A stretch of DNA of 64,000 nucleotides from Phallusia mammillata (GCA_965637545.1 OZ281494.1:2232001-2296000), one strand, 5' to 3'; shown: positions 19,684 through 60,500, numbered from the stretch's first letter. The notes: generated by a model from the sequence alone, not told the origin. Made by a program: numbers and translations.

Positions 19684-22600
19684 TCACATAACAACGAGTT
19701 CGGCAGAAGGCACGCGACATTTCTTACATTTGGCTAGTGCGCTGTCAATCACAGACGAATAAAGCAACGGGTTGAGGGCGCTGTTGATTGGAAGCAAAAC
19801 CGCAGCTGCAAGCACATAAACGATATCTGACATTATTACACCAGCAAGTGACAAAGAACTGAGGATGCAAATCGGAATCCAGCAACAGAAATCCGTCAGA
19901 AGCAATCTGGATATACGCTTTTGCATTTTGGCGCTCGTATCATTGTTTCTTGCCGCAGCCATGCGATTGCTGCGTCGATAGATAAGGACATAAGCGGCAA
20001 CCATGAAAATAAACAAGACAAAATCGACTGTGATAATAAACAGTGAATATTCCCAAGCTGCATGGCCACTTGAAGCAAAAAGTCTTGGCAAACACACGCT
20101 TGTTTTGGCGTAGTAACCAAACTCTCCTTTGATTGATTGGCCAGACATGTTACTGGCGATGACTCGTTTAGCTTCATGCCATGATAGCACGGTGCTGTTA
20201 GTGAGTGACATGCGTTGTGCCAAACTCATTGCAGCTTCAAAAGAAACAAAATCACGTTTGTGAACGAAATTGGGAAACCAGATTGTTGTTACAAAGTAAC
20301 CAGATACAAAATCAATTGTGGGAATGATGGCAATGACCATAGCAACACACCAAGTAACGAAACACGCCAAAATAATCCACTTAGGCCCAAGTGACATAGT
20401 GAGAAATGGTTTGTAGACAGATACAAGTCGATAAGCAGATATCAATGTCATGGTTAAAGCCGAAGTCTGAGATGAAATGACACACAGTGCGCCTAGGATT
20501 GAGCATTGTGTGCATGATCGCCATTGAGAATCAAAATAACAATAACTCCCAGAGAATTGGACACTTTTGACAGCCACAGCAAGTAAATAGATTCCCATTA
20601 ACATGTCGGAAACTGATAGGTTGACAATGAATATTTGAGTGCATTCATTTACACAACTGTCGGTATTCCAGTTTAGATATGTCTTTTTAACTGTGGTTGC
20701 AGCCACTATGAAATTCCCAATCAATGCAAGTATGCCCATGATCCATATAAACGCGTTCAAAATAGGGTTGGCGATCATTTCCTTCTGATTGGAGAAGACA
20801 GTGTCACGAGAACTGACAGGTGGACATTCGTCACTGCCATCCGAGCAGTCTTTGATTCCGTCTTCTTTGTCACGAATTGGCACTGAGATTGGATTCCCAT
20901 TAAGACAATAAAATCTCCTGTCCTTACAACGAATCTTTGCCTCATCCGATTTATCATCACAGTCGTAGTTTCCATCGCAAACTTTCATGACGTCAATACT
21001 CAACAAATCTCCACTGTTACAAATATAGCGTTTGGGACAAATTGATTCGTTATAGGAACTGTCTGATGTTCCATCGCACGTCCAGAGCTTTGCGGCAACT
21101 GACATAAATGCGGTATCGTTACAGAAAGCTGGTTGGTTGAGGCAGTTATGGCACTCATCAGTAGCACTTAAACATTCAGGTCTTCCGTCGCATGCTACAC
21201 CTAATGTTTTTCTCTCGGCACATATTATAGTGTCAATTTGTGGATAGCAATAGTTCGTGTTGAGATAGTTCAGGCAGACCACAGATTGGTTGCACAACAC
21301 AGAATCTATTGGATGGCAATCTGTTTGGTTGTAGCAGTGCATATGACCTGGTGGACAAGTTGACTGGGAATCGCCAAGCACAGCTTTGCACACCGTCTGA
21401 TTCTCGCACAAGCATTCATCTGACAGGTCGTAGCAGTCAATCACGCCATCGCACACCTGATTCCTTGAGATAACCAGTCGCCTGTCCAAGCAAAGGAAGC
21501 ATCGAAATTCTCCGTTGACGAAACAGAGATCGGATTTGTCAGCGCACTGGGCATCTTGGTCGTAAATATTTATTTGTGGCAAGCTACATGGCAATGTTAA
21601 CCAATAACCAAGACATTTGAAACTGGGGTATGCGTGAATGCTATCACCTGGTGTTATAAATGGACAAAAAGCACCCAAAGCAAATTGAATGATGTTGTTA
21701 AAATCCTGATATAAGACAGGAAATTGAGATGTGGGAACGTTGTCCGGTTGGCATCGAGGAATATTGCAAATCCAGTAATCATCAATACAAACTTGATCTT
21801 TGTGTCCTTCACACGGTCTGTGATGCTGAATGCAATGTAAAGAATTGGTGGGTTGGTACCTCACAAATCTCTCCATCGATTTTTTATTGGTGCAGTTTAA
21901 CAAGGTGTGCTCGCATTTTAAACTATACGAACGTGCATAGTAGTCACAAGGTTCATCGCTTTGATCAATGCATTGCGGTACACCATCTCCAACTGATGTG
22001 TTAGTTATACATTGCCCAGTTGGTGGGCAAATCTGTTCTTCATAGATGCATCCGCACATAACTTGATCACCGCTACACGTGCAATTGGTTTCGTCGCTGC
22101 CGTCTTTGCAGTCAAAATTTCCGTTGCACTTCAAAGATAATGGGATGCATTGTTTGGACTTGCACTCAAATTGATCTTCCCAGCAAGGACAGTTGACTTC
22201 ATCGCTGTAATCTTCACAATCATCAATCCTATCACATACCTCCGAGCTTGGCAGACAGCCACGCAAACCAACACATGAGGAACTTTCGTAACATACGCAT
22301 TGAAACTTATCAACTGGGCAAGTACAATTTACTTCGTCTGTTCCATCTAAACAGTCGTAGATGCCATCACATATTTGTGTCTTTTCATAACAACCTATCC
22401 CTTTCGTGCAATTACTGTCTCTTGGAAAACAGCCGCATTGGTATTGGTTTGCATTGCACTCCGCAGTCAAATTGTAGTCTTCGCATCCGCCAACTGGCGC
22501 ACATTGAGTCGCATTAAATGTAGTGGCCGTGTTGTTCGGTCTTGTTGCTGGGCAACCACACACAAACTCTCCCTTGTTGCACGTTTGCAGCGAATATCGA

Positions 22601-22935
22601 CATTCTTCTGTAAAAAAGCTGTCGCATTTAATATTTTTAGAACCACTGTATTTTTTGAGGGAATCGTTATCTACCCTTATAATAAGCGAACAAGTAAATT
22701 ACAGTGCTGTAAAATTAAACTGCGTTTAAAATAATAATATTTTGCCTGGTTAAGTTGTATTCTCATGTTTTATGACTATGGTTGTTTACTCTATACTATT
22801 CACAACACTGTTTATTTTATTTTAGCATGTTAATCCAGGAAGAAACACGATTTGCTTACCAAAAGTGACAAGCCCGTACGATGGTAAGCTGTTGATCAAC
22901 AGAACGAAAGATAACAAAAGCACTCTCCTAACCAT
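19684..22935 (-). CDS. LDLa-repeat GPCR without LRRs, type B (999 aa, 2 exons)
   Basis: Exon 1 22860-22935 (MVRRVLLLSFVLLINSLPSYGLVTF, donor gtaagc) and exon 2 19684-22607, total 3000 nt. Same architecture as type A. Confidence 0.93.
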
Positions 22936-25749
22936 ATTTACCCTGCTATATTATTTATTAATCTAAACTCAAAAGAAGACACGTATTGGCGACACAAGCA
23001 ACGTATCAATCCGACGATAACAAAACGTTTTCAAAATTGTAAGCTATACTGTTTTTGAAAACAATTAAATCACTATTTGTTGTGTACAATAACTAAGCTG
23101 TTCATTTTTTGACCACCTTGTTACGTTTTTACTTCTGTCAGAATTTCACATAAAACAATTATTTCATTCAAGCCCTAAGATGTTACCCTCCTTTACAAAC
23201 TGACCCGATCGTGAGCCACAACAATCTACTAAACGATCTAATGCTTGGCATGAGCAGGGGGAAGTCGCTGACCGTACGTTATTGCCCACACATCAATCAA
23301 GAGTTACTCGATTCAGATTATCCAGGCGAAACCCGGAAGAATGCTTTATCCAATTTGCAACACATAGCAAGTAAAGTTGTTTATTTGATAAAATACTGTC
23401 AACGAATTGATTTTTGTCGAAAAGCTCAGCCGATAGGAGCGTTTAATCTTTTCTCGGGTTCATGGGTGCTCAGTTTGGTCCAGATCACGTAAAGTATTTA
23501 AGTTGTGCTGTTTCAAATTGAAAACCTTTATTCTATCTTTCACAAATATGTCACTTTGGTGCAAATCCCTTCACATTTCATAGCAACCACGGTTTTTGCT
23601 CATAATAACAAATTTGACGACTTCCTGTCCAATACGAGTGAAAAGTGCAGATGGGATATCACAAGCTTCCTGCCTATACCCTTGTTGTACCCTTTTGACC
23701 AGATTTGGCCGCATTGGTTAAGTAAAACTTGTTTATATGAGACCACCATTGATCAACCAAGTGACAAATAATGAGAATAGTTCATCCTTCTGATATCGTA
23801 TTTTTTTCTGTTACTGAACAGTTTGCCGATACAATAGGTGTCCAAAACAAATCTCTTTTTGTGAATCTCTTTTACTATCTTGCACAAATGAGTGACCACA
23901 TAAATTATCGCTGTTTGAAATCGGCAACACAAGAAAATGCGTTAAATTGTTTGCTACAACCAAGACGAATCTGTACAAAGGTGAACAGCAGCAGACCTTG
24001 CAAGTGATACTGCCATGAAAAGTCCTTTTTAACTATTGATTTCAAGTATCGTTCAAAATATAAGAGAAAGCCGTAGACATGTATCCGGTCTTCACATCAA
24101 CAACTGATCGGCAATGATTATAATCATCTGTAAGCGAAGCCGGGTTTAGTACTTGCGGTTAAACTGGTGTATTAAGATTATATGACTTCCTTTTAAGAAG
24201 AGTATATGGCTGCATCAGTAATAGTTTAATATGCTTCCATTTAGTGACTGTGCTCCGGCCAAATCTCTTTTTGTCTACGTTTCAAATTTGGCACCAAAAC
24301 GGGTCATGTTTCAACGTCGCTAAAGAACTCAGGCGCAACGTGTTGCAACTATTTGTTGCCGGGCTAGCGGGGTTCGAGCTTGTAACAAAACAGATAAACT
24401 AGCCTTGAAGTGTAATAAAAAATAAAAAAATTCCGGCAACTTAACTTCCTACATTTAAAACTGAATGAAGCAAAACTTTCCGCAATTCTGATAGCATTAC
24501 AAATTGAAAATTATTTTTTACGTGTTTAAGCATCATAATTATCAGTTGCAAGAACTAAACTGTACTTGGAATTTTTGGACATGAACAACCGCGGCAATAA
24601 AGGACCAGTTATCTTGCTGAAACGTAAACTTTCCTTCTTTGTGACAGATCCACTCTCATATAACCAACAACAGTGTCAACTTTCTATCTTTTTAAACTGA
24701 CAAACTGTCGTAGAAGATGATTAGGAAATAAAATACTTTTGGTACTGATTGGTAGCGGTAACATGCCAAATACCTGCGTTACTATGGCTTATTAGTAATA
24801 AGCCTTATTAGTAATAAGTAATAAGTAATAGGTTATTACACAACGAAAGCAAAGCCATTAAAAACAGCTTCAAGTAAGGTTATATCGCGACCCGAAAACT
24901 AGATCAAATTCCGGGACTGTCAAACCAATTCGATAACATTCGTCTCGCTCCTGCATCTACAACATAAATGATATTTGTAGTTCTTGGGGAGTCTAGAATT
25001 TGGCAAAAGGTTTGCTAGCTGGAATTGTTTCTAAAGGTTTACTCGGGTTTGAATAATTAAAAAAAAGTATTTTTGGACATAGTCTCTACTGGGCGGTGCC
25101 TTTATTTTAAGGACTAAATGCCGTAAGTTTGCTTAAGAAATATGACACACGAATATACACGAGATCAAATCCCACCCAACAAGAAACAGAATGTCGCAGA
25201 GCATTTTTGCATTCCATAGCTATTTACCTGTTTTGCTTTTGCCCATGAACGCGCGAGGAAGGCAACAGATACTTGTAAAGCGTTGAGTCTGACTGATAGC
25301 GACATGGAATCACTACCTTTTCTTAAAGCAACATTTGAAACGTGGAGAAAAAGTTGTGGGATACGCCCAAATGTTGCATGCAAACATGGTATAAGCCACC
25401 ACTTAGTTTGAAACTTTCAAGTTTCAAATTTAATTCTGCAATTTTGTTGTAGTGATTTATAGGAAAACAAGCAAGTTCTATTCGTATTCAAAAACTGGGA
25501 TTAAATATTTTAATTAATTATGCAACAGTTTCGAGCAGATGCTAAACCCATTCAATATTCCTTTGTTTGTTTTAAACTGTACTTTCCTTCAAAATACACC
25601 ACTCCACGGTAATAAATTGAACTACAAACTTTCCACTTGTTTCAACGACAACGATTAAATATAAATTATAAAGTTTAAATTCTAAGACTGGTTTCAAATT
25701 TCAATATTTGTTTGCTGTCAAACTATTTGTTAGTAACCGTCTTGTAGAA

Positions 25750-26447
25750 CAGGCCTGTCAAACTCGCGGCCCGCGGGCCGCATGCGGCCCACGAAGCCCT
25801 CCAATGCGGCCCATGAACAGTCAACAGCAATTGTAATATTTTGTCCGATTTTTATCTAATTATACTAAATTTTTCTTACTTTTCAAAGTGAAACCTATTA
25901 TTCAAACAGACATTTACCGAAATTGAATTTATAGATACAAATCCATATGTTATGAATAGAAACGATAGTAATTAAAACTCCTTTGCCAAACCTTTGATTT
26001 TCAAACTGCCCTAAACAGATTTTGTGTTACTGAAAAGAGTATTACCAGGCTAGCAGCCATATGCGTCTGACTTTTGTAGGCCTATTATGTGAAAACAATG
26101 CGAAAAACAGGTATGAAATGCGTCACAATAAAGATTATGACGTAATAAACAGTTAAAACTGATCTTCACACTGTGCAGTTCAATCTGTGCATCAAGTTGG
26201 AAATTAATCTGGGTTTTGGGGGGGTCAATGGTATATATATATGATATAAACCTTTTTCTTTACCAATTTCAAAAACAAAAACCAGCAGATAATTGGCGGC
26301 TGTTGGTGAAATAAGGATTTGCAATGCGGCCGTCGTAGCGAAAAGGTTGTTTAAGTGTATAAAACTAGATTAAAAATCACATGCGGCCCTCGGCATAATT
26401 TCCAAACTGCAATATGGCCCCCGAACCCCACGAGTTTGACACCCCTG
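25750..26447. mobile_element. hAT (Charlie-like) MITE (family 3)
   Basis: TIRs CAGGCCTGTCAAACTC / GAGTTTGACACCCCTG, perfect 8-bp TSD TTGTAGAA. Empty site (ttttagaa) at ~19435 in the type-A spacer. Confidence 0.9.
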
Positions 26448-26681: not shown

Positions 26682-29600
26682 TTACATGGCAACGATTTCA
26701 GCAGTATTTCGGCGAGCAGAAGCAGCACGAAATTTCTTACATTTATTCACTGCACTGTCAATCACAGTTGAATAAAGCAACGGGTTTAGTGCGCTGTTGA
26801 TTGGAAGCAAAACCGCAGCTACAAGCACATAAACGATATCTGACAACGGTACGCCACCCATCGACAAATAACTGAGGATGCAAATCGGAATCCAGCAACA
26901 GAAATCGGTAAGAAGCAATCTGGATATTCGCTTCTGCATTTTGGCACTGATATCGTTGTTTCTTTCTTCAGCCATGCGATTGCTGCGTCGATAAATAAGG
27001 ACATAAGCGGCAAACATGAAAATAAACATGACGAAATTCAATGTGATGATAAAAAGTGAGTATCCCAAAGCTGAATGGCTTTCTGAAGCAAAGAGTCTTG
27101 GCAAACACACGCTGGTTTTGGCGTAGTAACCAAACTCTCCTTTGATGGATTGCCCTGACATGTTAATATCGATGACTCGTTTAGCGTCATGCCATGATAG
27201 CACGGTGCTGTTGGTGGGTGACATGCGTTGTGCCAAAATCATTGCAGCTTCAAAAGAAACAAAATCACGTTTGTGAACGAAATTAGGAAACCAGATTGTT
27301 GTTACAAAGTAACCAGATGCAAAATCAACTGTAGGAATGATGGCAATGACCAAAGCAACACACCAAGTAAAGAAACAGGCCAACAAAATCCACATAGGTG
27401 TGAGTGACATTGTAAGGAATGGTTTGTACACAGACACGAGTCGATAGACTGATATCAATGCCATAGTTATAGCCGAAGTCTGAGATGAAATGACGCACAA
27501 TGCACCTAGAATGGAGCATTGTGTGCTCGATCGCCACTCAGAATCGAAATAACAATAATTCCCAGAGAATTGGACACTTTTAACTGCAACAGCAAATAGA
27601 TAAATTCCCATTAACACGTCGGAAACTGAGAGATTGATAATGAATATTTCAGTACACTTTTTTACACAATCGTCCGATTTCCAGTTTGAGTATGTCTTTT
27701 TACCAGTGGTTGCAGCTACAATGAAATTCCCAATCAATGCAAGGATACCCATAAACCATATAAACGCGTTCAAAATAGGGTTGGCAATCATTTCTTTCTG
27801 ATTGGAGAAAATAGTGTAACGAGAGCTGACAGGTGGGCATTCGTCACTGCCGTCTGAGCAGTCTTTGATTCCGTCTTCCTTTTCTGCAATGGGCACTGAG
27901 AGTGGATTCCCATTAAAACAATAAAATCTTTTGTTCTTACAGCGATCCTTTGCCTCATCCGATTTATCGTCACAGTCGTAGTTTCCATCGCAAACTTTCA
28001 TGACGTCAATGCTCATAAAGTTACCACTGCTACAAATATAACGTTTGGGACAAAGTGATTCGTTGTGGGAGCCACGCTGTAGTCCATCACACATCCAAAG
28101 ATCTGTGGCATCTGCCACGAATTGGCTGTCGTTGCAAAACGCCGGTGGATGTGGACAGTTAGGACACTCATCAGTGGAATTTAGACATTCAGGTCTTCCA
28201 TCGCATGCTACACCAAATGTATTCCTTTCGGTGCATAAAATCAAGTCAATTTGTTGATAGCAATATTTGATATTTCTCGAGTCAATGCATTTTACATTGC
28301 CGTTGCACAACACAGAATCTATTGGAAGGCAATCTGTTTGGTTGTAGCAGTGCATATAACCTGGTGGACAAGTTGACCGGGAATCGCCAAACACAGCTTT
28401 GCACACGCTCTGATTCTCGCATAAACATTCATCTGACAGGTCGTAGCAGTCAATCACGCCATCGCACACCTGATTCCTTGAGATAACTAGTCTCTTGTCC
28501 AAGCAAAGGAAACATCGAAATTCTCCGTTCACAAAACACAGATCAGATTTGTCAGCGCACTGGGCATCTTGGTCGTAAAGATTGATTTGAGGCAAGCTAC
28601 ATGGAAATGTTAACCAGTATCCAAGACATTTGAAACTCGGGTGTGCGTGGATGTGGTAATCAGCTGGATTTATGAATGGACAAAAAGCGTACAAAGCCAA
28701 ATTGATGTTTTTATTGTGATCCTGATAGTAAACCGGAGGTGTCGATGGTGGTGTATGCTCTCCTTCGCATTGAGGCTTGTTGCAAATCCAGTATTCATCA
28801 GTGCACATTTTATCCTTGTGCTCTTTACACGGTCTGTGATGCTGAATGCAATGTGCAGAATTGTTTACTTGGTACTTCAAAAATCTCTGCATTGCTGTTT
28901 TACTGGTGCAGTTTATTAAACTGTAATAACACGATAGCTCATAACTTTTAGAAAAATAGTCACAAGGTTCATCGCTATGGTCCATGCAGTTCGGAGTACC
29001 ATCGGCCACCGATGTGTTAGGTATGCATTTCCCGATGGTCGGACAAATCTGTTCTTCATAGATGCATCCGCACATAACTTGATCACCGCTACACGTGCAA
29101 TTGGTTTCGTCGCTGCCGTCTTTGCAGTCAAAATTTCCGTTGCACATCAAAGTTAATGGGATGCATTGTTTAGACTTGCACTCAAATTGATCTTCCCAGC
29201 AAGGACAGTTGACTTCATCGCTGTAATCTTTACAATCATCAATCCTATTGCAAACCTCCGAGCTTGGCAGACAGCCACGCAAACCAACACATGAGGAACT
29301 TTCGTAACATGCACATTGAAACTTATCAACTGGGCAAGTACAATTTACTTCGTCTGTTCCATCTAAACAGTCGAAGATGCCATCACATATTTGTGTCTTG
29401 TCATAACAACCTATCCCTTTCGTGCAATTACTGTCTCTTGGAAAACAGCCGCATTGGTATTGGTTTGCATTGCACTCCGCAGTCAAATTGTAGTCTTCGC
29501 AACCGCCAACTGACGCACATTGAGTCGCATTAAATGTAGTTGCCGTGTTGTTCGGTCTTGTTGCTGGGCAACCACACACAAACTCTCCCTTGTTGCACGT

Positions 29601-29953
29601 TTGCAGCGAATATCGACATTCTTCTGTAAAAAAAGCTGTCGCATTTAATATTTTTAGAACCACTGTATTTTTTTGAGGGAATCGTTATCTACCCTTATAA
29701 TAAGCGAACAAGTAAATTACAGTGCTGTAAAATTAAACTGCGTTTAAAATAATAATATTTTGCCTGGTTAAGTTGTATTCTCATGTTTTATGACTATGGT
29801 TGTTTACTCTATACTATTCACAACACTGTTTATTTTATTTTAGCATGTTAATCCAGGAAGAAACACGATTTGCTTACCAAAAGTGACAAGCCCGTACGAT
29901 GGTAAGCTGTTGATCAACAGAACGAAAGATAACAAAAGCACTCTCCTAACCAT
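26682..29953 (-). CDS. LDLa-repeat GPCR without LRRs, type C (1005 aa, 2 exons)
   Basis: Exon 1 29878-29953 and exon 2 26682-29623, phase-1 intron. 5' part is near-identical to type B; the rest is distinct. Confidence 0.93.
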
Positions 29954-33666: not shown

Positions 33667-36600
33667 TTACATGGCAACGATTTCAGCAGTATTTCGGCGA
33701 GCAGAAGCAGCACGAAATTTCTTACATTTATTCACTGCACTGTCAATCACAGTTGAATAAAGCAACGGGTTTAGTGCGCTGTTGATTGGAAGCAAAACCG
33801 CAGCTACAAGCACATAAACGATATCTGACAACGGTACGCCACCCATCGACAAATAACTGAGGATGCAAATCGGAATCCAGCAACAGAAATCGGTCAGAAG
33901 CAATCTGGATATTCGCTTCTGCATTTTGGCACTGATATCGTTGTTTCTTTCTTCAGCCATGCGATTGCTGCGTCGATAAATAAGGACATAAGCGGCAAAC
34001 ATGAAAATAAACATGACGAAATTCAATGTGATGATAAAAAGTGAGTATCCCAAAGCTGAATGGCTTTCTGAAGCAAAGAGTCTTGGCAAACACACGCTGG
34101 TTTTGGCGTAGTAACCAAACTCTCCTTTGATGGATTGCCCTGACATGTTAATATCGATGACTCGTTTAGCGTCATGCCATGATAGCACGGTGCTGTTGGT
34201 AGGTGACATACGTTGTGCCAAAATCATTGCAGCTTCAAAAGAAACAAAATCACGTTTGTGAACGAAATTAGGAAACCAGATTGTTGTTACAAAGTAACCA
34301 GATGCAAAATCAATTGTAGGAATGATGGCAATGAACAAAGCAACACACCAAGTAACGAAACACGCCAAAATAATCCACTTAGGCCCAAGTGACATAGTGA
34401 GAAATGGTTTGTAGACAGATACAAGTCGATAAGCAGATATCAATGCCATAGTTATAGCCGAAGTCTGAGATGAAATGACGCACAATGCACCTAGAATGGA
34501 GCATTGTGTGCTCGATCGCCACTCAGAATCGAAATAACAATAATTCCCAGAGAATTGGACACTTTTAACTGCAACAGCAAATAGATAAATTCCCATTAAC
34601 ACGTCGGAAACTGAGAGATTGATAATGAATATTTCAGTACACTTTTTTACACAATCGTCCGATTTCCAGTTTGAGTATGTCTTTTTACCAGTGGTTGCAG
34701 CTACAATGAAATTCCCAATCAATGCAAGGATACCCATAAACCATATAAACGCGTTCAAAATAGGGTTGGCAATCATTTCTTTCTGATTGGAGAAAATAGT
34801 GTAACGAGAGCTGACAGGTGGGCATTCGTCACTGCTGTCTGAGCAGTCTTTGATTCCGTCTTCCTTTTCTGCAATGGGCACTGAGAGTGGATTCCCATTA
34901 AAACAATAAAATCTTTTGTTCTTACAGCGATCCTTTGCCTCATCCGATTTATCGTCACAGTCGTAGTTTCCATCGCAAACTTTCATGACGTCAATGCTCA
35001 TAAAGTTACCACTGCTACAAATATAACGTTTGGGACAAAGTGATTCGTTGTGGGAGCCACGCTGTAGTCCATCACACATCCAAAGATCTGTGGCATCTGC
35101 CACGAATTGGCTGTCGTTGCAAAACGCCGGTGGATGTGGACAGTTAGGACACTCATCAGTGGAATTTAGACATTCAGGTCTTCCATCGCATGCTACACCA
35201 AATGTATTCCTTTCGGTGCATAAAATCAAGTCAATTTGTTGATAGCAATATTTGATATTTCTCGAGTCAATGCATTTTACATTGCCGTTGCACAACACAG
35301 AATCTATTGGAAGGCAATCTGTTTGGTTGTAGCAGTGCATATAACCTGGTGGACAAGTTGACCGGGAATCGCCAAACACAGCTTTGCACACGCTCTGATT
35401 CTCGCATAAACATTCATCTGACAGGTCGTAGCAGTCAATCACGCCATCGCACACCTGATTCCTTGAGATAACTAGTCTCTTGTCCAAGCAAAGGAAACAT
35501 CGAAATTCTCCGTTCACAAAACACAGATCAGATTTGTCAGCGCACTGGGCATCTTGGTCGTAAAGATTGATTTGAGGCAAGCTACATGGAAATGTTAACC
35601 AGTATCCAAGACATTTGAAACTCGGGTGTGCGTGGATGTGGTAATCAGCTGGATTTATGAATGGACAAAAAGCGTACAAAGCCAAATTGATGTTTTTATT
35701 GTGATCCTGATAGTAAACCGGAGGTGTCGATGGTGGTGTATGCTCTCCTTCGCATTGAGGCTTGTTGCAAATCCAGTATTCATCAGTGCACATTTTATCC
35801 TTGTGCTCTTTACACGGTCTGTGATGCTGAATGCAATGTGCAGAATTGTTTACTTGGTACTTCAAAAATCTCTGCATTGCTGTTTTACTGGTGCAGTTTA
35901 TTAAACTGTAATAACACGATAGCTCATAACTTTTAGAAAAATAGTCACAAGGTTCATCGCTATGGTCCATGCAGTTCGGAGTACCATCGGCCACCGATGT
36001 GTTAGGTATGCATTTCCCGATGGTCGGACAAATCTGTTCTTCATAGATGCATCCGCACATAACTTGATCACCGCTACACGTGCAATTGGTTTCGTCGCTG
36101 CCGTCTTTGCAGTCAAAATTTCCGTTGCACATCAAAGTTAATGGGATGCATTGTTTAGACTTGCACTCAAATTGATCTTCCCAGCAAGGACAGTTGACTT
36201 CATCGCTGTAATCTTTACAATCATCAATCCTATTGCAAACCTCCGAGCTTGGCAGACAGCCACGCAAACCAACACATGAGGAACTTTCGTAACATGCACA
36301 TTGAAACTTATCAACTGGGCAAGTACAATTTACTTCGTCTGTTCCATCTAAACAGTCGAAGATGCCATCACATATTTGTGTCTTGTCATAACAACCTATC
36401 CCTTTCGTGCAATTACTGTCTCTTGGAAAACAGCCGCATTGGTATTGGTTTGCATTGCACTCCGCAGTCAAATTGTAGTCTTCGCATCCGCCAACTGGCG
36501 CACACTGAGTCGCATTAAATGTAGTTGCCGTGTTGTTCGGTCTTGTTGCTGGGCAACCACACACAAACTCTCCCTTGTTGCACGTTTGCAGCGAATATCG

Positions 36601-36936
36601 ACATTCTTCTGTAAAAAAGCTGTCGCATTTAATATTTTTAGAACCACTGTATTTTTTGAGGGAATCGTTATCTACCCTTATAATAAGCGAACAAGTAAAT
36701 TGCAGTGCTGTAAAATTAAACTGCGTTTAAAATAATAATATTTTGCCTGGTTAAGTTATATTCTCATGTTTTATTACTATGGTTGTTTACTCTATACTAT
36801 TCACAACACTGTTTATTTTATTTTAGCATGTTAATCCAGGAAGAAACACGATTTGCTTACCAAAAGTGACAAGCCCGTACGATGGTAAGCTGTTGATCAA
36901 CAGAACGGAAGATAACAAAAGCACTCTCCTAACCAT
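33667..36936 (-). CDS. LDLa-repeat GPCR without LRRs, type C' (1005 aa, 2 exons)
   Basis: Exon 1 36861-36936 and exon 2 33667-36608. Nearly identical to 26682-29953 except for a type-B tract over TM3-TM4. Confidence 0.93.
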
Positions 36937-50663: not shown

Positions 50664-51040
50664 ATTTCCAAACTTTGTAGCAAAGCAACATCAACTGACT
50701 AACAACATACACCAACAACTGAACGGGCAATACTTGCATTGCTTCCTCACTGCATTTCACTTAGAAATGTATTAATCTTTCGATTTATTATGAGTGAGAT
50801 ATGCATCAAAAAGAAACAAGCTAAATATCGGCGAGAAAGATCATCTATGCCAATTTACAAACGAAAGATACTTATAATGCACAATGCAGAAAGAAAATAG
50901 TATGTTAAATGTTGGGGGATTGTAATATATACCACTGTACCGATTCGCTTAAAACAATGGGCCTATTATGTGCGGAATATCTTTTAATTGTCAAAATACA
51001 CGAAAACAACGGTCTCCGCATAAAAATAAAGCAAACAAGA

Positions 51041-54000
51041 TTACATAGTAACGAGTTCGGTATTCGTCCGGCGCACAGAAGCAACACCAGCTTTCTTACA
51101 TTTCTCCAAAGCGCGGTCAATCACAGATGAATAAAGCAACGGGTTGAGGGCGCTGTTGATCGGAAGCAAAACCGCAGCTGCAAGCACATATACGATGTCC
51201 GACAAAACTACACCACCAAGCGACAAAAAACTAAGCATGCAAATTGGAATCCAACAACAGAAATCGGTCAGAAGCAATCTAGATATTCGTTTTTGCATTT
51301 TGGCGCTCGTATCATTGCTTTTTGCCTCGGTCATGCGATTGCTGCGACGATAAATAAGAATATAAGCGACTACCATGAAAATAAACATGACAAAATCTAA
51401 TGTGATGATAAACAGTGAGTATCCCCAAGCTGCATGGCTTTCTGAAGCAAAGAGCCTTGGCAAACACACGCTGGTTTTGGCGTAGTAACCAAAGTCTCGC
51501 TTGATGGATCGCCCTGACATGTTAATGTCGATGACTTGTTTAGCTTCATGCCATGATAGCACTGTGCTGTTGGTGGGTGACATTTGTTGTGCCAAAAGCA
51601 TTGCAGCTTCAAAAGAAACAAAATCACGTTTGTGAACGAAATTAGGAAACCAGATTGTTGTTACAAAGTAACCAGATGCAAAATCAATTGTGGGAACGAT
51701 GGCAATGACCAAAGCAACACACCAAGTGAAGAAACACCCCAATAAAATCCATTTAGGTCCCAGTGACATAGTAAAAATGGGTTCCACACAGACACCAGTC
51801 GGTAGACTGATATCAGTGCCATGGTTAAAGCCGAAGTCTGAGATGAAATGACACACAGTGCACCTAGGATCGAGCATTGTGTGCTTGAACGCCATTCTGA
51901 ATCAAAATAACAATAACTCCCAGAGAACTGGGCACTTTTGGCTGCAACAGCAAGTAAATAGATTCCCATTAACATGTCGGAAACTGATAGGTTAACAATG
52001 AATATTTGATTGCTTTTATTTACACGATTGTCGGTATTCCAGTTTAGATATGTCTTTTTTAGAGTGGTTGCCGCCACTATAAAATTCCCAATCAATCCAA
52101 GGATACCCATAAACCATATAAACGCGTTCAAAATAGGGTTGGCGATCATTTCCTTCTGATTGGAGAAGACAGTGTTACGAGAGCTGACATGTGGACATTC
52201 GTCACTGCCGTCTGAGCAGTCTTTGATTCCGTCTTCCTTGTCAGCAATGGGCACTGATAGCGGATTCCCAGTAAGACAATAAAACCTCGTGTCCTTAAAA
52301 CGATCCTTTGCCTCATCCGATTTATCGTCACAATCGTAGTTTCCATCGCAAACTTTCATGACGTCAATGCTCGACAAATCTCCATTTTTACAAATATAGC
52401 GTTTGGGACAAAGTGATTCGTTGTAGGAGTTGCCTGGAGTTCCATCACATGCCCAGTATTGTGCTGCATCTGACATAAATTGGGTGTCATTGCAGAATGT
52501 TGGTGGATATTGGCAATTATGGCACTCATCAGTAGCACTTAAACATTCAGGTCTTCCATCGCATGCTACACCTAATGTATCCCTCTTGGCGCATATTATA
52601 GCATCAATTTGTGGATAACAATAGTTCGTGTTTAGCCAGTCCAAGCAGACCACAGATTGGTTGCACAGCACATAATCTATCGGAAGGCAATCTGTTTGGT
52701 TGTAGCAGTGCATAAGACCTGGTGGACAAGTTGACTGGGAATCGCCAAGCACAGCTTTGCACACCGTCTGATTCTCGCATAAGCATTCATCTGACAGGTC
52801 GTAGCAATCAATCACGCCATCGCACACCTGATTCCTTGAGATAACGAGTCTCTTGTCCAGGCAAAGGAAGCATCGGAATTCTCCGTTGACGAAACACAGA
52901 TCAGATTTGTCAGTGCACTGGGCGTCTTGATCGTAGAGATTGATTTGTGGCAAGCTGCATGGAAATGTTAACCAATATCCAAGACATTTGAAACTCGGTT
53001 TCGCATGATTGTGGTAGCCACTTGGTGTTATAAATGGACAAAAAGAAACCAAAGCGATTTGATAGTTATTGTTAAGGTTTTGATAAAAGACAGGTGATGA
53101 TAAAGGAGGCCTGTCCTGTGGTCGGCATTGGGGACTGTTGCAAATCCAGTAATTATCAGTACACACTTTATCTTTGTGTCTTTCACACGGTCTGTGATGC
53201 TGAATACAACGTGAAGATTTGTTTACTTGGTACTTCAAATATCTCTCCAACGATTTTTTACTGGTGCAGTTAACAAAAAACTGTGTGCAGCTTAAACCAA
53301 AAGTCTTTATATAATAGTCGCAAGGTTCATCGGTTTGATCAATGCAGTTCGGTGTACCATCGGCCACTGTTGTGTTAGGTATGCATTGCCCAGTAGTCGG
53401 ACAGATCTGATCACCATAGATGCATCCGCACATTACTTGATCACCACTGCATGTGCAATTGGTTTCGTCGCTGCTGTCATCGCAGTCAAACTTCCCGTTG
53501 CATTTTAAAGATAATGAGATGCACTGTTTAGACTTGCACTCAAATTGATCTTCCCAGCAAGGACAGTTGGCTTCATCGCTGTAATCTTTGCAATCATCTA
53601 CCCTGTCACATACGTTCGAACTTGGAAGACAGCCACGCAAACCAACACATGCGGAAATCTCGTAACATACGCATTGAAACTCATTAACTGGGCAAGTGCA
53701 ATTAATTTCGTCTGTTCCGTCTAAACAGTCGTAGATGCCATCACATATTTGTGTCTTTTCATAACATCCCAGCCCATACGTGCAATTACGGTCTCTTGGA
53801 AAACAACCGCATTGGTATTGGTTTGCATTGCAAGTCGCAGTTACATTATTGTCTTCGCATCTCCCGACTGGCGCACATTGAGTCGCATCAAATGTAGTTG
53901 AAATGTTGTCAGGTCTTGTTGCTGGGCAACCACACACGAACTCTCCGTAGTAGCAAGTTTGCAACCAATGCCGACATTCCTCTGTAAAAACAGTTTTGGC

Positions 54001-54326
54001 ACTTAACAGTCATGGGGGTGCAAAAAACTTAAACTAGTTTTTTTTTTTCAAAGGGAGTCGTCAACTACACTTTCTTTTAAACGAACAAGTAAACCGTAGT
54101 GGTGTAAAATTGAACTGCAATAAACAAAATCATATTTCGTTTGGTAAAAATCTGTTACACCAGCTGTGTTGCGTTTTATGACCATACCGTATCATACTCA
54201 CCGTCCTGTATTTCTTAAAAGTTTAACAGGAACAATCAAAATTTACTTACCATAAGTGACAAGCCCGTACGATGGAAAGTTGTTGATCAACAGAACAAAA
54301 GATAACAATAGCACAATCCTTACCAT
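51041..54326 (-). pseudogene. LDLa-repeat GPCR type A', single-base frameshift between TM3 and TM4 (pseudogene or sequence error)
   Basis: Exon 1 54251-54326; exon 2 51041-53981 is 2941 nt versus 2942 in type A. gtaaa-aatggg at ~51775 versus gtaaagaatggg at ~13930 splits the ORF into 767-aa and 284-aa pieces. Confidence 0.75.
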
Positions 54327-56681
54327 ATTTAACCTGCTAAATTATTCATTAATCTAAACAAAAAAGAAGGCACATATTGTCTGCTCAAGCTACCTATCGA
54401 TTCACACCGTTTACAAAACCTTTTACACTGTTTTGGGGATAATTGCAAAGTATCGCTGTTGATGGTGAACAATAACTAAAGTTCTCAGTTATTTAACAAT
54501 TTTGTTACTTTTTACCTTGTGTGATTGCTATTTACAACAAACGAAAAACAACATGAATAGATTGATACGGTAACAAACTTTAGACTTTTTTTTATTTTAT
54601 GTTATTCAACAAAAGCTTCACTCTAGCTCTAAAATGTTAACGTTGTACAAACTGCCGCAATCGCGAGTCACAAAAATATACTAAACCATCTAATGCTTGA
54701 CATAAGCGAAGGGAAGTCGTTGATCAAACGTCATTGCCCTCACATCAATCAAGCTTTACTAGTTTCAAATTATTCAGGCATAACCTGGGGAGAATACTTT
54801 AACTAATCTGCAACGCATAGCAAGTAAGGTTACTTATATGATTAAATAATGCCCACAAAATAATTTTTATCGAAAATACAGAATAGCGTAATTCGCGTTT
54901 AATTTTTTCTCGGGTTCATAAGTGCTCATAACTGTTCACAAATAAGTTATACTTCCAACTGTCTTGTCTGACGTTTTCCGAAACGCTAGTTTTGTCCAGA
55001 TCTAAAATAATTAAATCAGCATTCAAATTGTGCTGTCCCAGATTAAAAACCGCATTTGCAATTACAATTATTTTTGACTACTGTTAGTTTTCTACTGATT
55101 TAAAGATGACACCTTAAACAAGCTTCCACATTTAGGACACCTAAATTATATTAGTCTAAATTTCCTTTCTACATCACAACAACCGCAGTTGGCTCAAAAT
55201 GACAGATTAGACGATTTCCTGCCCCATATGGGTGCTAAGTGCGGAAGGGATATTACACTCTTCCTGCCCTATCTTTTTGACCAGTTGATTTGCTCCCATT
55301 GGTTAAGTGAAACTTGTTTATACGAGACCACCATTGGGCAACCAATTGACAATTAATGATAATAATTCACCCTTACATTATATTGTTTTTGTGTAACTGA
55401 ATAGTTTGCCGATACGTCAGGCGTCCAAAATAAATCTTTTGTTATCCTGCACAACTGAGTGACCAGACAAATCATCGTTGTTTTTGTTTGTTGCGAAGGT
55501 GTCAAGGTAAGGCTTTTCTGCCACAACCAAGACAAATCCGTACAAAGGTTAACATCAGCGCACCTTGTGAGTGACACTGCAATGCAAAGTGCTTTTAAAC
55601 CATTTATTTCAAGAAGCGTTTGACACATAAGAGGAAGCCATTACACATGCCTTTACATCAACAGCTGATCAGCAATGATAAATCATCATCGGTGAGAAAG
55701 TCGGGTTTAGGTGGTGTATTAAGATAATATGACTTCCTATTTAAGTAGTGTGTATGGCTGCAATCTTAAAAAGGAATCCTGAATGTTTTTTATACTAAGA
55801 GTGTTTGAACTGAACAGTATCTGATCTTTCAACAGGCAGCATGGTCATCGACGATCACCGTTTATTTACAAGTTTTACAAATTTAAAAATTGTTTTCTAC
55901 GTGTTTATCCGTTGATACTGATATGCCTAAAACTGTTCACGGATTTTTTAGACATGAACAACTGCCACCATAAAGGGCCAGTGACCGGCTAAAACGTAAA
56001 GTATACTTATTTGTGACAAACCCATTCTTATATAACCAACAACAGTGTCGACTTTCTACTTTTCTAAACTAACAAATTATCGTAGAAGGTAATTTGCAAA
56101 TCGTAATTGTGTTCAGGGTTATGAACCTAATCAATAACATGCCAAACACCTTCTGCATTATATAGCTTTTTTATACAACAAAAGCACAGCTGTGTACAAC
56201 AGCTTCCAGTACGTCATATAATTCACACCGCTCTTGCTCAATCTGCGTCAAGTTCATCGTGACCAAACCATCAACCACTTTACCGACCAAACCGTTGGGA
56301 ATTTCCCTTCGCTGGTTGGAATTGTTTCTCAAGGTTATGGCCAAATTACTCGGGTTGGAACATTTTGACACATAGTCTCTACTGCATGGTGTCTTCATAT
56401 CGAGGACTAAACGCCGTAAGTTTGCTTAAGAACTATGACATATCAACATACGCGAGTAAATTTACATCTGAATTCTTTGGAAATCTCAACGTATCAACGT
56501 CTACCTATTCAGGTACAAGAGCGCGAATCGCGTTTCAGCAAACTTAGGGTTTTTCTTTACATTTCAGGCCAAGTTTGGAATGTTCCTTTACATTTTTAAA
56601 TCCCACTGAGCAGACAACAGCTCGTTGCGCACATTCTTTTTCTTTATTTTAACCCATGACCCCGCGGGGCAGGCAACGGAT

Positions 56682-56928
56682 CAGTGGTTCCCAACCAGGG
56701 CCCATGGCCCCCCAGGGGGTCCACGAGCTATGTTCCGGGGGGCCACGGGTGTAGATTTACAAGAAACACCCACTAAAAGTCATTTTCACTTATTCCCGAA
56801 TTTATTCGACTATTTCACACACTATTTGTTGATAGTGAGGTTATCACGTCATTACTCTATTAGACCTGTTTAAGGCCAAAATTAATACTTTAAGGGGGCC
56901 ATCGTCCACGAAAGGTTGGGAACCACTG
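56682..56928. mobile_element. hAT MITE family 2, duplicated copy
   Basis: Same TIRs and TSD as 18837-19084. Confidence 0.9.
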
Positions 56929-57528
56929 CAACAGATCATTGCAAAGCGTTGAGTCTAACTCATGGAAAAATATCACGTTCTATTAGTGTTCAACAATTTG
57001 GGATCAAATAGTTTTAATTAGTGATTCAACAGTGTCGAGCCGATGCTAAACCCATTCATTTTTCCTTTGTGTGTTTTTAAAATGAATTTTCCTTTAAAAT
57101 ACTTGCGTTTCCGGTAACAAACTGAACTACAACCATATTACTTGCTGCAAAAGCACACATCAAAAGGCAATAAGGCAAACAGTAGGCTAAGATAGTCAGT
57201 TACTCTGAGTTTAAATTGCTAAGACTGGTTTTAAATTTATATGTTTGTTTCCTGGCAAACCCTTTATTAGTAATATTCTTTTAGAAACCTAAAAAAGTAG
57301 GTTTTGTTGTTCCTTGGCAAACTTTTGTTTTGATTATCCAAGGTATGTATTGATTTTGAACAAATCAAACCTGTACAAAAATGTAGCAAGAACATCAGTT
57401 TCAAGCACATCACCTAAAAGCAAAAAGAAAAACGTTTACACAAAAAGAATTAAGGGCAAAATAGAAAGGGTATATTCAATATATCGGTAACCTTTTGACA
57501 CTAGTACGACACAAGAAATTCACGATGG

Positions 57529-60500
57529 TCACATAATAACGAGTTCGGCAGAAGGCACGCGACATTTCTTACATTTGGCTAGTGCGCTGTCAATCACAGA
57601 CGAATAAAGCAACGGGTTGAGGGCGCTGTTGATTGGAAGCAAAACCGCAGCTGCAAGCACATAAACGATATCTGACATTATTACACCAGCAAGTGACAAA
57701 GAACTGAGGATGCAAATCGGAATCCAGCAACAGAAATCCGTCAGAAGCAATCTGGATATACGCTTTTGCATTTTGGCGCTCGTATCATTGTTTCTTGCCG
57801 CAGCCATGCGATTGCTGCGTCGATAGATAAGGACATAAGCGGCAACCATGAAAATAAACAAGACAAAATCGACTGTGATAATAAACAGTGAATATTCCCA
57901 AGCTGCATGGCCACTTGAAGCAAAAAGTCTTGGCAAACACACGCTGGTTTTGGCGTAGTAACCAAACTCTCCTTTGATTGATTGGCCAGACATGTTACTG
58001 GCGATGACTCGTTTAGCTTCATGCCATGATAGCACGGTGCTGTTAGTGGGTGACATGCGTTGTGCCAAACTCATTGCAGCTTCAAAAGAAACAAAATCAC
58101 GTTTGTGAACGAAATTAGGAAACCAGATTTTTGTTACAAAGTAACCAGATACAAAATCAATTGTGGGAATGATGGCAATGACCATAGCAACACACCAAGT
58201 AACGAAACACGCCAAAATAATCCACTTAGGCCCAAGTGACATAGTGAGAAATGGTTTGTAGACAGATACAAGTCGATAAGCAGATATCAATGTCATGGTT
58301 AAAGCCGAAGTCTGAGATGAAATGACGCACAGTGCGCCTAGGATTGAGCATTGTGTGCTTGAACGCCATTCTGAATCAAAATAACAATAACTCCCAGAGA
58401 ACTGGACACTTTTGACTGCAACAGCAAGTAAATATATTCCCATTAACATGTCGGAAACTGATAGGTTGACAATGAATATTTGAGTGCATTTATTTACACA
58501 ACTGTCGGTATTCCAGTTTAGATATGTCTTTTTAACTGTGGTTGCAGCCACTATGAAATTCCCAATCAATGCAAGTATGCCCATGATCCATATAAACGCG
58601 TTCAAAATAGGGTTGGCGATCATTTCCTTCTGATTGGAGAAGACAGTGTCACGAGAACTGACAGGTGGACATTCGTCACTGCCATCCGAGCAGTCTTTGA
58701 TTCCGTCTTCCTTGTCACGAATTGGCACTGAGATTGGATTACCACTTAGACAATAAAATCTCCTGTCCTTACAACGAATCTTTGCCTCATCCGATTTATC
58801 ATCACAGTCGTAGTTTCCATCGCAAACTTTCATGACGTCAATACTCAACAAATCTCCATTGTTACAAATATAGCGTTTGGGACAAATTGATTCGTTATAG
58901 GATCTGTCTGATGTTCCATCGCACGTCCAGAGCTTTGCGGCAACTGACATAAATGCGGTATCGTTACAGAAAGCTGGTTGGTTGAGGCAGTTATGGCACT
59001 CATCAGTAGCACTTAAACATTCAGGTCTTCCGTCGCATGCTACACCTAATGTTTTTCTCTCGGCACATATTATAGTGTCAATTTGTGGATAGCAATAGTT
59101 CGTGTTGAGATAGTTCAAGCAGACCACAGATTGGTTGCACAACACAGAATCTATTGGATGGCAATCTGTTTGGTTGTAGCAGTGCATATGACCTGGTGGA
59201 CAAGTTGACTGGGAATCGCCAAGCACAGCTTTGCACACCGTCTGATTCTCGCACAAGCATTCATCTGACAGGTCGTAGCAGTCAATCACGCCATCGCACA
59301 CCTGATTCCTTGAGATAACCAGTCGCCTGTCCAAGCAAAGGAAGCATCGAAATTCTCCGTTGACGAAACAGAGATCGGATTTGTCAGCGCACTGGGCATC
59401 TTGGTCGTAAATATTTATTTGTGGCAAGCTACATGGCAATGTTAACCAATACCCAAGACATTTGAAACTGGGGTATGCGTGAATGCTATCACCTGGTGTT
59501 ATAAATGGACAAAAAGCACCCAAAGCAAATTGAATGATGTTGTTATAATCCTGATATAAGACAGGAAATTGAGATGTGGGAACGTTGTCCGGTTGGCATC
59601 GAGGAATGTTGCAAATCCAGTAGTCATCAATACAAACTTGATCTTTGTGTCCTTCACACGGTCGGTGATGCTGAATGCAATGTAAAGAATTGTTGGGTTG
59701 GTATCTCACAAATCTCTCCATCGATTTTTTATTGGTGCAGTTTAACAAGGTGTGCTCGCATTTTAAACTATACGAACGTGCATAGTAGTCACAAGGTTCA
59801 TCGCTTTGATCAATGCATTGCGGTACACCATCTCCAACTGATGTGTTAGTTATACATTGCCCAGTTGGTGGGCAAATCTGTTCTTCATAGATGCATCCGC
59901 ACATAACTTGATCACCGCTACACGTGCAATTGGTTTCGTCGCTGCCGTCTTTGCAGTCAAAATTTCCGTTGCACTTCAAAGATAATGGGATGCATTGTTT
60001 GGACTTGCACTCAAATTGATCTTCCCAGCAAGGACAGTTGACTTCATCGCTGTAATCTTTACAATCATCAATCCTATCACATACCTCCGAGCTTGGCAGA
60101 CAGCCACGGAAACCAACACATGAGGAACTTTCGTAACATGCACATTGAAACTTATCAACTGGGCAAGTACAATTTACTTCGTCTGTTCCATCTAAACAGT
60201 CGAAGATGCCATCACATATTTGTGTCTTTTCATAACAACCTATCCCTTTCGTGCAATTACTGTCTCTTGGAAAACAGCCGCATTGGTATTGGTTTGCATT
60301 GCACTCCGCAGTCAAATTGTAGTCTTCGCATCCGCCAACTGGCGCACACTGAGTCGCATTAAATGTAGTTGCCGTGTTGTTCGGTCTTGTTGCTGGGCAA
60401 CCACACACAAACTCTCCCTTGTTGCACGTTTGCAGCGAATATCGACATTCTTCTGTAAAAAAGCTGTCGCATTTAATATTTTTAGAACCACTGTATTTTT

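What the first reader, a model, noticed from the sequence alone, without database searches (positions are those of the whole stretch)
20340..58430. Patchwork sequence exchange between receptor types
Seen: (i) C' 34339-34445 is identical to B 20341-20447 and unlike its twin C (TM3-ICL2-TM4). (ii) B' ~58355-58430 matches type A (~14035-14110) rather than B (DSEWRSSTQC versus DSQWRSCTQC; ECL1). (iii) Types B and C share spacer, exon 1, intron and the N-terminal modules up to QICP (~22030/29045), then diverge abruptly. (iv) The 1538-2335 fragment is B-like at TM3-4 but A-like at the C-terminus. Inference: gene conversion and unequal crossover shuffle ectodomain, loop and G-protein-coupling segments into new receptor combinations.
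Basis: partly seen in the sequence, partly recalled or inferred. Interest (0 to 1): 0.7.

Follow-up and report, generated by a model that had tools for sequence, protein, structure and literature searches.

The report
Mosaic receptor genes from paralog recombination
A sea-squirt cluster of near-duplicate cell-surface receptor genes really has swapped pieces between copies, by hybrid-gene formation and short copy-and-paste patches, which is a well-known way for tandem gene families to evolve, seen here in an orphan tunicate receptor family.

Summary
All four observations are in the sequence. Three are far beyond chance.

**The genes.** They are two-exon tunicate LDL-A-repeat plus relaxin-receptor-like 7TM receptors, the "LDLRR-GPCR" family of Kamesh 2008. 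They are arrayed A-B-C-C' ... A'-B', with C'' just outside the window.

- **(i)** C' 34339-34445 is 100% identical to B and B' over 107 bp, inside an otherwise C-identical gene. There are 18 contiguous B-state sites among 386 informative sites (P<=2e-26). Exact unitigs from two independent studies cross both junctions, so this is not a consensus artefact.
- **(ii)** B' 58359-58420 carries 7 contiguous A-type sites (P<=2e-9).
- **(iii)** C and C' are hybrids. B-type spacer, exon 1, intron and the first ~180 codons are joined to a C-type body within C' 36029-36130. The outside copy C'' keeps a non-B 5' end. Segment trees (100/100) and AU tests (p 2e-7 to 1e-4) reject a single tree.
- **(iv)** The fragment at 1538 is mosaic, but its "B-like" start is really 97-99% like paralog L013.

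**New here.** C, C' and C'' are near-identical for ~1.9 kb, yet each carries a different variant of the same ~110-bp TM3-ICL2-TM4 stretch. A hotspot is suggested within this cluster. It was not replicated in a second subfamily.

**Verdict.** This is real ectopic gene conversion plus unequal crossover. It is an ordinary mechanism in a new family. Functional consequences are untested.

The parts
13198..16170 (-). Gene A, long exon (990-aa ORF). It has 8 LDL-A stretches and a rhodopsin-type 7TM. The exon-1 signal peptide starts at ATG 16481.
19684..22563 (-). Gene B, long exon. The exon-1 signal peptide starts at ATG 22935. B (or B') is the donor type of the C' patch and of the 5' end of C and C'.
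26682..29663 (-). Gene C, a hybrid with a B-type 5' end and a C-type body. It keeps a TM3-ICL2-TM4 variant with no donor elsewhere in the genome (best match 87-88%).
33667..36564 (-). Gene C', the same hybrid as C. Its body differs from C at 1 site over ~2 kb outside the patch.
34339..34445 (-). Conversion tract in C'. It is 107 bp and 100% identical to B 20341-20447 and B' 58186-58292. The minimal tract is 34356-34435 (18 diagnostic sites). It changes 7 residues across the DRY-equivalent motif, ICL2 and the start of TM4.
20341..20447 (-). Donor-type sequence in B for the C' tract.
36029..36130 (-). Breakpoint interval of the B-5'::C-3' hybrid in C'. The equivalent intervals are C 29044-29145 and B 22028-22130. 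It lies just after the QICP codons. A B-type contig diverges exactly at 36029.
36030..38785 (-). B-type 5' exon part, intron, exon 1 and upstream spacer carried by C'. It is homologous to B 22030-25316, C 29045-32340 and B' 59875-63159.
57529..60408 (-). Gene B', the copy of B in the segmental duplication.
58359..58420 (-). A-type conversion tract in B' (ECL1 to the start of TM3). It has 7 diagnostic sites. The outer limits are 58337-58467. The A counterpart lies at ~14043-14104.
51041..53964 (-). Gene A', the copy of A. Its reading frame is broken by a 1-bp deletion inside the TM3-ICL2 stretch, so it is a likely pseudogene.
1538..2874 (+). Fragment F, an inverted and internally deleted copy. 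An A-upstream-like region (709-1524) is joined directly to TM3. F is L013-like at 1538-~1720, mixed in the middle, and A-like in its 3' end and flank.
12919..26173 (.). Segmental duplication, copy 1 (A-B-spacer). It is 98.6% identical to 50760-64000.
50760..64000 (.). Segmental duplication, copy 2 (A'-B'-spacer). It continues outside the window into C'' (L008).

Best explanation
The window holds a young tandem array of two-exon genes for tunicate LDL-A-repeat / relaxin-receptor-like 7TM receptors. Homologous recombination between paralogs, misaligned or ectopically paired, has made the copies into mosaics.

(1) Hybrid genes. An unequal crossover, or an equivalent long-tract event, between B and an ancestral C-type gene fused two parts. 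B contributed its upstream spacer, signal-peptide exon, intron and first ~180 codons. The C-type gene contributed its body. The join lies just after the QICP motif. The 7.0-kb unit was then duplicated, giving C and C'. The unrecombined C-type gene survives as C'' just right of the window.

(2) Short conversion tracts. Short non-reciprocal gene-conversion tracts were later pasted between types:
- 107 bp of B or B' into C' (TM3-ICL2-TM4)
- 62-131 bp of A-type into B' (ECL1)
- 109 bp of L019-like sequence into C''
- L013-like and A-like parts in the dead fragment F

(3) Homogenisation. Longer tracts keep the C-type bodies almost identical to one another.

Shown: the mosaics themselves, their statistical and phylogenetic significance, and the presence of the C' junctions in reads.

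Inferred: the mechanism class (conversion versus double crossover), the direction and order of the events, and any effect on signalling.
For: Architecture and family:
- Pfam finds 8-9 LDL-A stretches plus 7tm_1, and no LRR even at E<=5.
- The best homologues are Ciona, Phallusia and Clavelina GRL101-like proteins.
- The family is described in PMC2396169.

Array map.

Short tracts:
- The C' tract is 107 of 107 identical to B, with 18 contiguous sites and P<=2e-26.
- C's own variant has no donor in the genome, so C' is the recipient.
- B and B' are unchanged in the tract, which fits a non-reciprocal event.
- Exact contigs span both junctions: X1 34311-34445 and X10 34421-34546, from different studies.
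- The B' tract has 7 contiguous sites, P<=2e-9. B's version is unique in the genome.

Hybrid genes:
- The identity profile shows the switch.
- The 5' segment tree groups (B,B',C,C') at 100/100, with L008+L013 elsewhere.
- The body segment tree groups (C,C',L008) at 100/100.
- AU tests reject the congruent alternatives: p 1.3e-4, 2e-7, 3.7e-9 and 0.006.
- L008's upstream DNA has no match in the window.
- Site patterns in the shared 5'/spacer region are 12:2:0 for ((B,B'),(C,C')).

Other mosaics in the cluster: L010/L012 and L008/L019.
Against: - No long reads were available. Only short Logan contigs could be laid, so phasing across whole genes and the true copy number are unverified.
- At C' 36131 and 36138 the only contig laid in three runs carried B-type letters. 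The hybrid junction itself is therefore not confirmed in reads.
- C and C', or the two A-B blocks, could in principle be divergent haplotypes placed in tandem.
- The direction of (ii) rests on parsimony.
- The precise order of events is only softly supported. This includes the proposed insertion of the A'-B' block between C' and C''.
- The apparent exchange hotspot was not seen in a second subfamily.
Confidence: 0.85

Rival explanations
1. Assembly or consensus artefact. The patches arise from mixing reads of collapsed near-identical repeats during assembly or polishing.
For: The repeats are 7 kb long and 93-99% identical. This is a setting where consensus errors occur. No long reads could be examined.
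Against: Exact k-mer contigs built independently from read sets of two different studies cross both C' junctions. They carry diagnostic sites from both parents. A 107-bp unitig that ends exactly at the tract borders appears in X9 and X10. This is the expected graph signature of a real shared tract. Mis-polishing would homogenise near-identical copies. It would not insert a B-type patch into one of three otherwise identical C-type genes.
Confidence: 0.03
2. The mosaic copies are alleles rather than paralogs. C and C', and possibly the A-B and A'-B' blocks, would be divergent haplotypes falsely laid in tandem. The patches would then be allelic polymorphisms.
For: Tunicates are highly heterozygous (general knowledge). 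In run X1 the C'-specific contig and contigs expected to be shared by three C-type copies have similar word depth, ~87-96. The tool warns that depth is not copy number. Run X2 lacks contigs over 34462-34692.
Against: The window has no gaps. The units differ by several indels and sit in one 36-Mb contig with a regular 7.0-kb period. The third C-type gene has a completely different 5' end and upstream region. Even if this rival is true, the B-type tract in a C-type background still requires ectopic conversion from B.
Confidence: 0.08
3. The directions are reversed. C, not C', was overwritten in the ICL2 patch, and B, not B', was overwritten in ECL1, each by donors not present in this assembly.
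For: C shares rare states with L007 over a short stretch (23 bp exact; TPMWILLAC at the protein level). Four of B's seven tract states are unique.
Against: Genome-wide searches find no donor better than 87-88% for C's patch, or 93% for B's tract. In contrast, C' equals B at 100% over 107 bp, and B' equals the A-type at all 7 sites. Typical between-type divergence (~15%) explains the unique states of C and B as original lineage sequence.
Confidence: 0.07
4. The patches arise from parallel point mutation or convergent selection, without recombination.
For: The patches lie in functionally relevant loops (ECL1, ICL2).
Against: In (i), 18 of 18 clustered differences match one paralog exactly, and 11 of them are silent (18 nt changes, 7 aa changes). 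In (ii), 7 of 7 match, with only 2 aa changes. P values are 1e-9 to 1e-26.
Confidence: 0.01

Closest known systems
Ciona LDLRR-GPCRs (Kamesh et al. 2008, PMC2396169)
   Same: Both have tandem LDL-A repeats in the ectodomain and no LRRs. Both have a 7TM related to INSL3/relaxin receptors and to snail GRL101. Both are tunicate lineage-specific expansions and both are orphan.
   Different: Identity to any listed Ciona, Phallusia or Clavelina protein is only 33-41%. This genome has >100 matches, against 14-30 reported in Ciona. The paper does not discuss exchange between copies.
Hybrid genes from unequal crossing-over in tandem arrays (haemoglobin Lepore/anti-Lepore; red/green opsin hybrids). Cited from general knowledge.
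   Same: There is a single breakpoint inside homologous genes. The 5' part and upstream flank come from one paralog and the 3' part from its neighbour. Copy number changes by one repeat unit.
   Different: Here the parents were ~15% divergent at the join, and the hybrid was itself duplicated. The reciprocal product is not observable.
Interlocus gene conversion in chemosensory and immune receptor arrays (for example V1R in Mus, PMC2644715; MHC class II bm12, PMC2187482)
   Same: Both show short (~50-150 bp) non-reciprocal tracts that copy a paralog's sequence into an otherwise distinct gene and create new combinations.
   Different: The tracts here fall in 7TM loops (ECL1, ICL2) of an orphan LDL-A receptor, rather than in known ligand-binding segments. 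No population data are available.

Membership tests
LDLRR-GPCR (tunicate LDL-A repeat GPCRs) | Tandem LDL-A modules in the N-terminal ectodomain | tested here: met
   PF00057 at E 1e-25 to 1e-28, with 8-9 stretches per protein at a relaxed threshold. The Cys/DxSDE modules are visible in the alignment.
LDLRR-GPCR (tunicate LDL-A repeat GPCRs) | No leucine-rich repeats between the LDL-A modules and the 7TM | tested here: met
   No LRR family was reported even at E<=5.
LDLRR-GPCR (tunicate LDL-A repeat GPCRs) | Rhodopsin-class 7TM of the relaxin/INSL3-receptor/GRL101 type | tested here: inconclusive
   The 7tm_1 match is significant, and homologues are named GRL101-like by their sources. No explicit tree with RXFP1/2 or GRL101 was built here.
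LDLRR-GPCR (tunicate LDL-A repeat GPCRs) | Tunicate lineage | tested here: met
   All named best hits are ascidians: Ciona, Phallusia, Clavelina, Styela.
Interlocus (ectopic) gene conversion | A short tract identical to a paralog, embedded in a different background, and clustered beyond chance | tested here: met
   C' tract: 107 bp, P<=2e-26. B' tract: P<=2e-9. L008/L019 tract: P<=8e-7.
Interlocus (ectopic) gene conversion | Non-reciprocal: the donor keeps its sequence | tested here: met
   B and B' are identical to each other and to C' in the tract. A and A' keep A-type states in the B' tract.
Interlocus (ectopic) gene conversion | The junctions exist in primary reads and not only in the assembly | tested here: met
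   Exact contigs from X1 and X10 cross the two C' junctions. The B' tract was not tested in reads.
Unequal-crossover hybrid gene | A single breakpoint, with the 5' part plus the whole upstream flank from one paralog and the 3' part from another | tested here: met
   Identity profile, segment trees and AU tests. B-type homology continues 2.7-3.3 kb upstream.
Unequal-crossover hybrid gene | Copy-number gain by one repeat unit, with a regular period | tested here: met
   Breakpoint-equivalent positions are 22030, 29045 and 36030, giving periods of 7015 and 6985 bp.
Unequal-crossover hybrid gene | A reciprocal deletion product, or direct observation of the event | not testable with these tools
   This needs population or pedigree long-read data.

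The most novel reading that the evidence does not exclude
In this cluster the TM2-TM4 portion, and especially the ~110-bp TM3/DRY-equivalent/ICL2/TM4 stretch, behaves as a recurrently exchanged cassette.

Three C-type genes are otherwise identical over ~1.9 kb, yet each carries a different paralog's version of it. Differences between young duplicates are over-represented there in 5 of 6 comparisons.

If this reflects a recombination hotspot, or selection for re-pairing ectodomains with different G-protein-coupling loops, it would be a germline mechanism that diversifies signalling output rather than ligand recognition.
Probability: 0.12. Interest if true: 0.6.

Novelty: new member of a known kind. 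Interest (0 to 1): 0.35.

Why it matters
The result documents how a large, orphan, tunicate-specific receptor family diversifies. Whole N-terminal module blocks and short loop segments are moved between tandem paralogs. Trees of these genes are therefore segment-dependent, and orthology or selection analyses must be done per segment.

C and C' form a natural pair that differs almost only by 7 residues around ICL2. This is a ready-made experiment on G-protein coupling for whoever de-orphanises the family.

The mechanism itself, ectopic conversion and unequal crossover in tandem arrays, is textbook.

Tried and rejected
- **Simple longest-run GENECONV-style scan over all pairs.** It gave many significant pairs but reports only one run per pair, and conserved blocks inflate it. 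I replaced it with targeted triplet tests.
- **Hotspot replication in a separate subfamily on contig C3, L020-L030.** There was only one effectively independent comparison. Its cluster lay before TM1 (A-cds 1613-1698), not at TM3-ICL2. The hotspot is therefore not replicated, with low power.
- **Array-history model.** The model places the A'-B' block as an insertion into the C'/C'' spacer, with its boundary at ~25316/38785/63159. Site patterns shift from 0:17:4 to about 6:10:7 across that point. Many of the left-side sites form one local cluster, so the support is soft. I kept it as a hypothesis only.
- **Homogenisation of C and C' bodies.** My first estimate overcounted upstream differences because of a misaligned edge. 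With numbers, there are 14 differences in columns 100-1120 against 1 in columns 1120-3170. After allowing for coding constraint, the excess similarity is only modest. The sharper evidence is C versus C'': 35 differences in columns 540-1080 against 1-2 in columns 1100-2200.
- **Word depth of Logan contigs as copy number.** The tool warns against this use, so it was not used.
- **Spliced model.** All protein work used the long exon by reference.
Full report
**What is in the window.**
The window has no N and is 38% GC. A self-comparison shows ~7-kb tandem units and a 13-kb segmental duplication, 12919-26173 = 50760-64000 at 98.6%.

Each unit carries one long minus-strand ORF of ~960-990 aa:
- A: 13198-16170
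- B: 19684-22563
- C: 26682-29663
- C': 33667-36564
- B': 57529-60408
- A': 51041-53964, split into two ORFs

Pfam finds LDL-A repeats plus a rhodopsin-type 7TM. At a relaxed threshold there are 8-9 LDL-A stretches and still no LRR family.

The region 38785-50760 holds remnants of an adhesion GPCR, with GPS and 7tm_2 matches.

The best homologues are ascidian "GRL101-like" proteins at only 33-41% identity. The family is the "LDLRR-GPCR" expansion described for Ciona: LDL-A repeats, no LRR, a relaxin/INSL3-receptor-like 7TM, orphan, with ESTs mainly from haemocytes (PMC2396169).

The genome is 240 Mb and has >100 matches to the family. These include a dozen close paralogs within ~100 kb on the same contig, and a C-type gene immediately right of the window (L008, here called C'').

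**Claim (i).**
C' 34339-34445 equals B 20341-20447 at 107 of 107 bases. This is the maximal exact tract, and it is shared with B'.

C and C' differ at one site across ~2,050 alignment columns. They then differ at 18 sites within 80 bp, and at all 18 C' has the B state. In the triplet C'/C/B the 18 B-state sites are contiguous among 386 informative sites, with an upper-bound P of 1.9e-26.

C's own version of the stretch has no better match than 87-88% anywhere in the genome. C therefore keeps lineage sequence and C' is the recipient.

At the protein level the tract changes 7 residues from the residue before the DRY-equivalent (YRL) motif through ICL2 into TM4. For example, SLTPMWILL becomes SLGPKWIIL.

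**Read support.**
Only Logan contigs were available, with no raw reads. Four runs from three studies were laid at >=98% likeness on 34000-36300.

- X1 has an exact 135-bp contig at 34311-34445. It holds all 18 B-state sites plus the C'-specific flank sites 34338, 34335 and 34318.
- X10 has an exact 126-bp contig at 34421-34546. It holds 16 C-type flank sites plus 4 B-state sites.
- X9 and X10 each have a 107-bp unitig that ends exactly at the tract borders. This is the expected graph signature of a segment shared by B, B' and C'.

Both junctions therefore exist as k-mers in read sets from two studies. Long-read phasing remains undone.

**Claim (ii).**
B and B' differ at 39 of 4447 columns. Seven of these lie in 62 bp (B' 58359-58420), and all seven carry the A/A' state.

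With sites where A = A' and both differ from B taken as informative, the seven are contiguous among 622, with P<=1.7e-9. The outer limits of the tract are 58337-58467.

B's version is unique in the genome, with the next best match at 93%. Only 2 of the 7 changes alter the protein (E/Q and S/C).

The simplest reading is A-type to B' conversion after the block duplication. B is the protein-level outlier, and B' carries the family consensus DSEWRSSTQC.

**Claim (iii).**
B versus C identity is 95-100% from the spacer to just after the QICP codons, and 70-90% after that. Dense differences begin at C' 36028. The last sparse differences are at 36131 and 36138, so the breakpoint lies within C' 36029-36130 (C 29044-29145, B 22028-22130). 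A B-type contig peels away from C' exactly at 36029.

Adding paralogs from outside the window fixes the direction. L008 (C'') is ~100% identical to C and C' from cds column ~1080 onward. Its 5' end groups with L013, L009 and L017, and its upstream DNA has no match in the window.

Segment trees:

| Segment | Columns | Grouping | Support |
|---|---|---|---|
| 5' | 0-540 | (B,B',C,C') | 100/100 |
| 5' | 0-540 | L008+L013 | 100/99 |
| body | 620-2090 | (C,C',L008) | 100/100 |
| body | 620-2090 | the above plus L013 | 100/99 |
| body | 620-2090 | B/B' beside A/L002 | 90/91 |
| 3' | 2350-3005 | B/B' with L013 | 98/96 |

AU tests reject the congruent alternatives, with p = 1.3e-4, 2e-7, 3.7e-9 and 0.006. 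Some of these groups were named after seeing the trees.

C and C' are therefore B-5'::C-3' hybrids. The breakpoint-equivalent positions 22030, 29045 and 36030 give the 7.0-kb period expected from unequal crossover followed by unit duplication.

In the shared 5'/spacer region, site patterns favour ((B,B'),(C,C')) at 12:2:0. The transfer therefore predates the B/B' split. One history that fits is insertion of the A'-B' block into the C'/C'' spacer, but the test of its boundary was soft.

**Claim (iv).**
F (1538-2874, plus strand) is an inverted, internally deleted copy. A-upstream-like sequence (709-1524) is joined directly to TM3.

Within the window F looks B-like at its start and A-like at its 3' end. 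With all paralogs included, 1538-~1720 is 97-99% L013-like. L013 is the neighbouring gene just left of the window. The middle of F is mixed, and the 3' end is 97-98% A-like.

The three C-type genes each carry a different version of the same ~110 bp:
- C' equals B.
- C'' equals L019 exactly over 109 bp (6 contiguous sites, P 8e-7).
- C has its own version, which shares rare states with L007.

A' has its frameshifting 1-bp deletion in the same stretch.

Differences between young duplicates are over-represented in cds columns 2000-2500 (TM2 to TM4). This holds for A/A', B/B', C/C', L010/L011 and C'/C'' (binomial p from 4e-3 to 1e-12). It does not hold for L009/L017. Many of these sites have both states present in other paralogs, which is a signature of conversion.

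Family-wide variability there is average. Hypervariable ectodomain blocks show no such patches. This is consistent with a homology requirement for heteroduplex formation, which is my inference.

A second subfamily on another contig did not show the same clustering, in one informative comparison with low power. I treat the "exchange cassette" idea as a low-probability novel reading.

Other mosaics are present. L010 and L012 are 98-99% identical from column 2100 on, but 80-90% identical over most of the ectodomain.

**Comparison with what is known, and verdict.**
The mechanism matches classic unequal-crossover hybrids and interlocus conversion in receptor arrays, for example V1R (PMC2644715). 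The held literature has only the 2008 description of this family, and nothing on exchange among its members.

Earlier scan notes on this genome agree with this picture. They describe the family as LDL-A-rich and LRR-free, invoke "copy-correction", and record an old inverted duplication at the left of the window.

This is a new instance of a known process in a little-studied family. Functional impact is untested.

Noticed in passing
window 51041-53964 (near 51745-51895): A' carries a 1-bp deletion inside the TM3-ICL2 stretch. The deletion splits the ORF into 51661-53964 and 51041-51895. A' is a likely pseudogene, unless this is a sequencing error.
   Followed up: partly
window 41038-43053: Minus-strand ORFs match the GPS motif (42454-43053) and secretin-type 7tm_2 (41038-41568). 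These are remnants or exons of an adhesion GPCR in the 12-kb interval between the two receptor blocks.
   Followed up: no
window 36131 and 36138: In runs X9, X10 and X1, the only contig laid over these positions carries the B-type letters, not the C/C' reference letters. The same contig has the C' letter at 36157. Either individuals are polymorphic here, or contigs are missing.
   Followed up: no
window 34462-34692: Run X2 (a 2018 study) has no contigs at >=98% likeness over this part of C/C', although it covers neighbouring bins. This may reflect copy-content or sequence polymorphism between individuals.
   Followed up: no
L010, L011, L012 (G000:C1:2137221-2154078): This is a second three-gene tandem set, ~80 kb left of the window. 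L010 and L012 are 98-99% identical over the 7TM and at cds columns 200-500, but 80-90% identical over most of the ectodomain. It is another ectodomain/7TM mosaic.
   Followed up: partly
window 20514-20575 (B ECL1): B alone in the genome encodes DSQWRSCTQC. This adds a cysteine two residues before the conserved TM3 disulfide cysteine.
   Followed up: partly
L021/L022 versus L025-L029 (contig C3): In a distant subfamily, 13 of 23 differences between two near-identical groups fall within ~86 bp just before TM1 (A-cds 1613-1698). This is a probable separate conversion tract.
   Followed up: no
window 709-1538: Fragment F joins A-upstream-like sequence directly to TM3. This implies a ~2.8-kb internal deletion in an inverted old copy of the unit.
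   Followed up: partly
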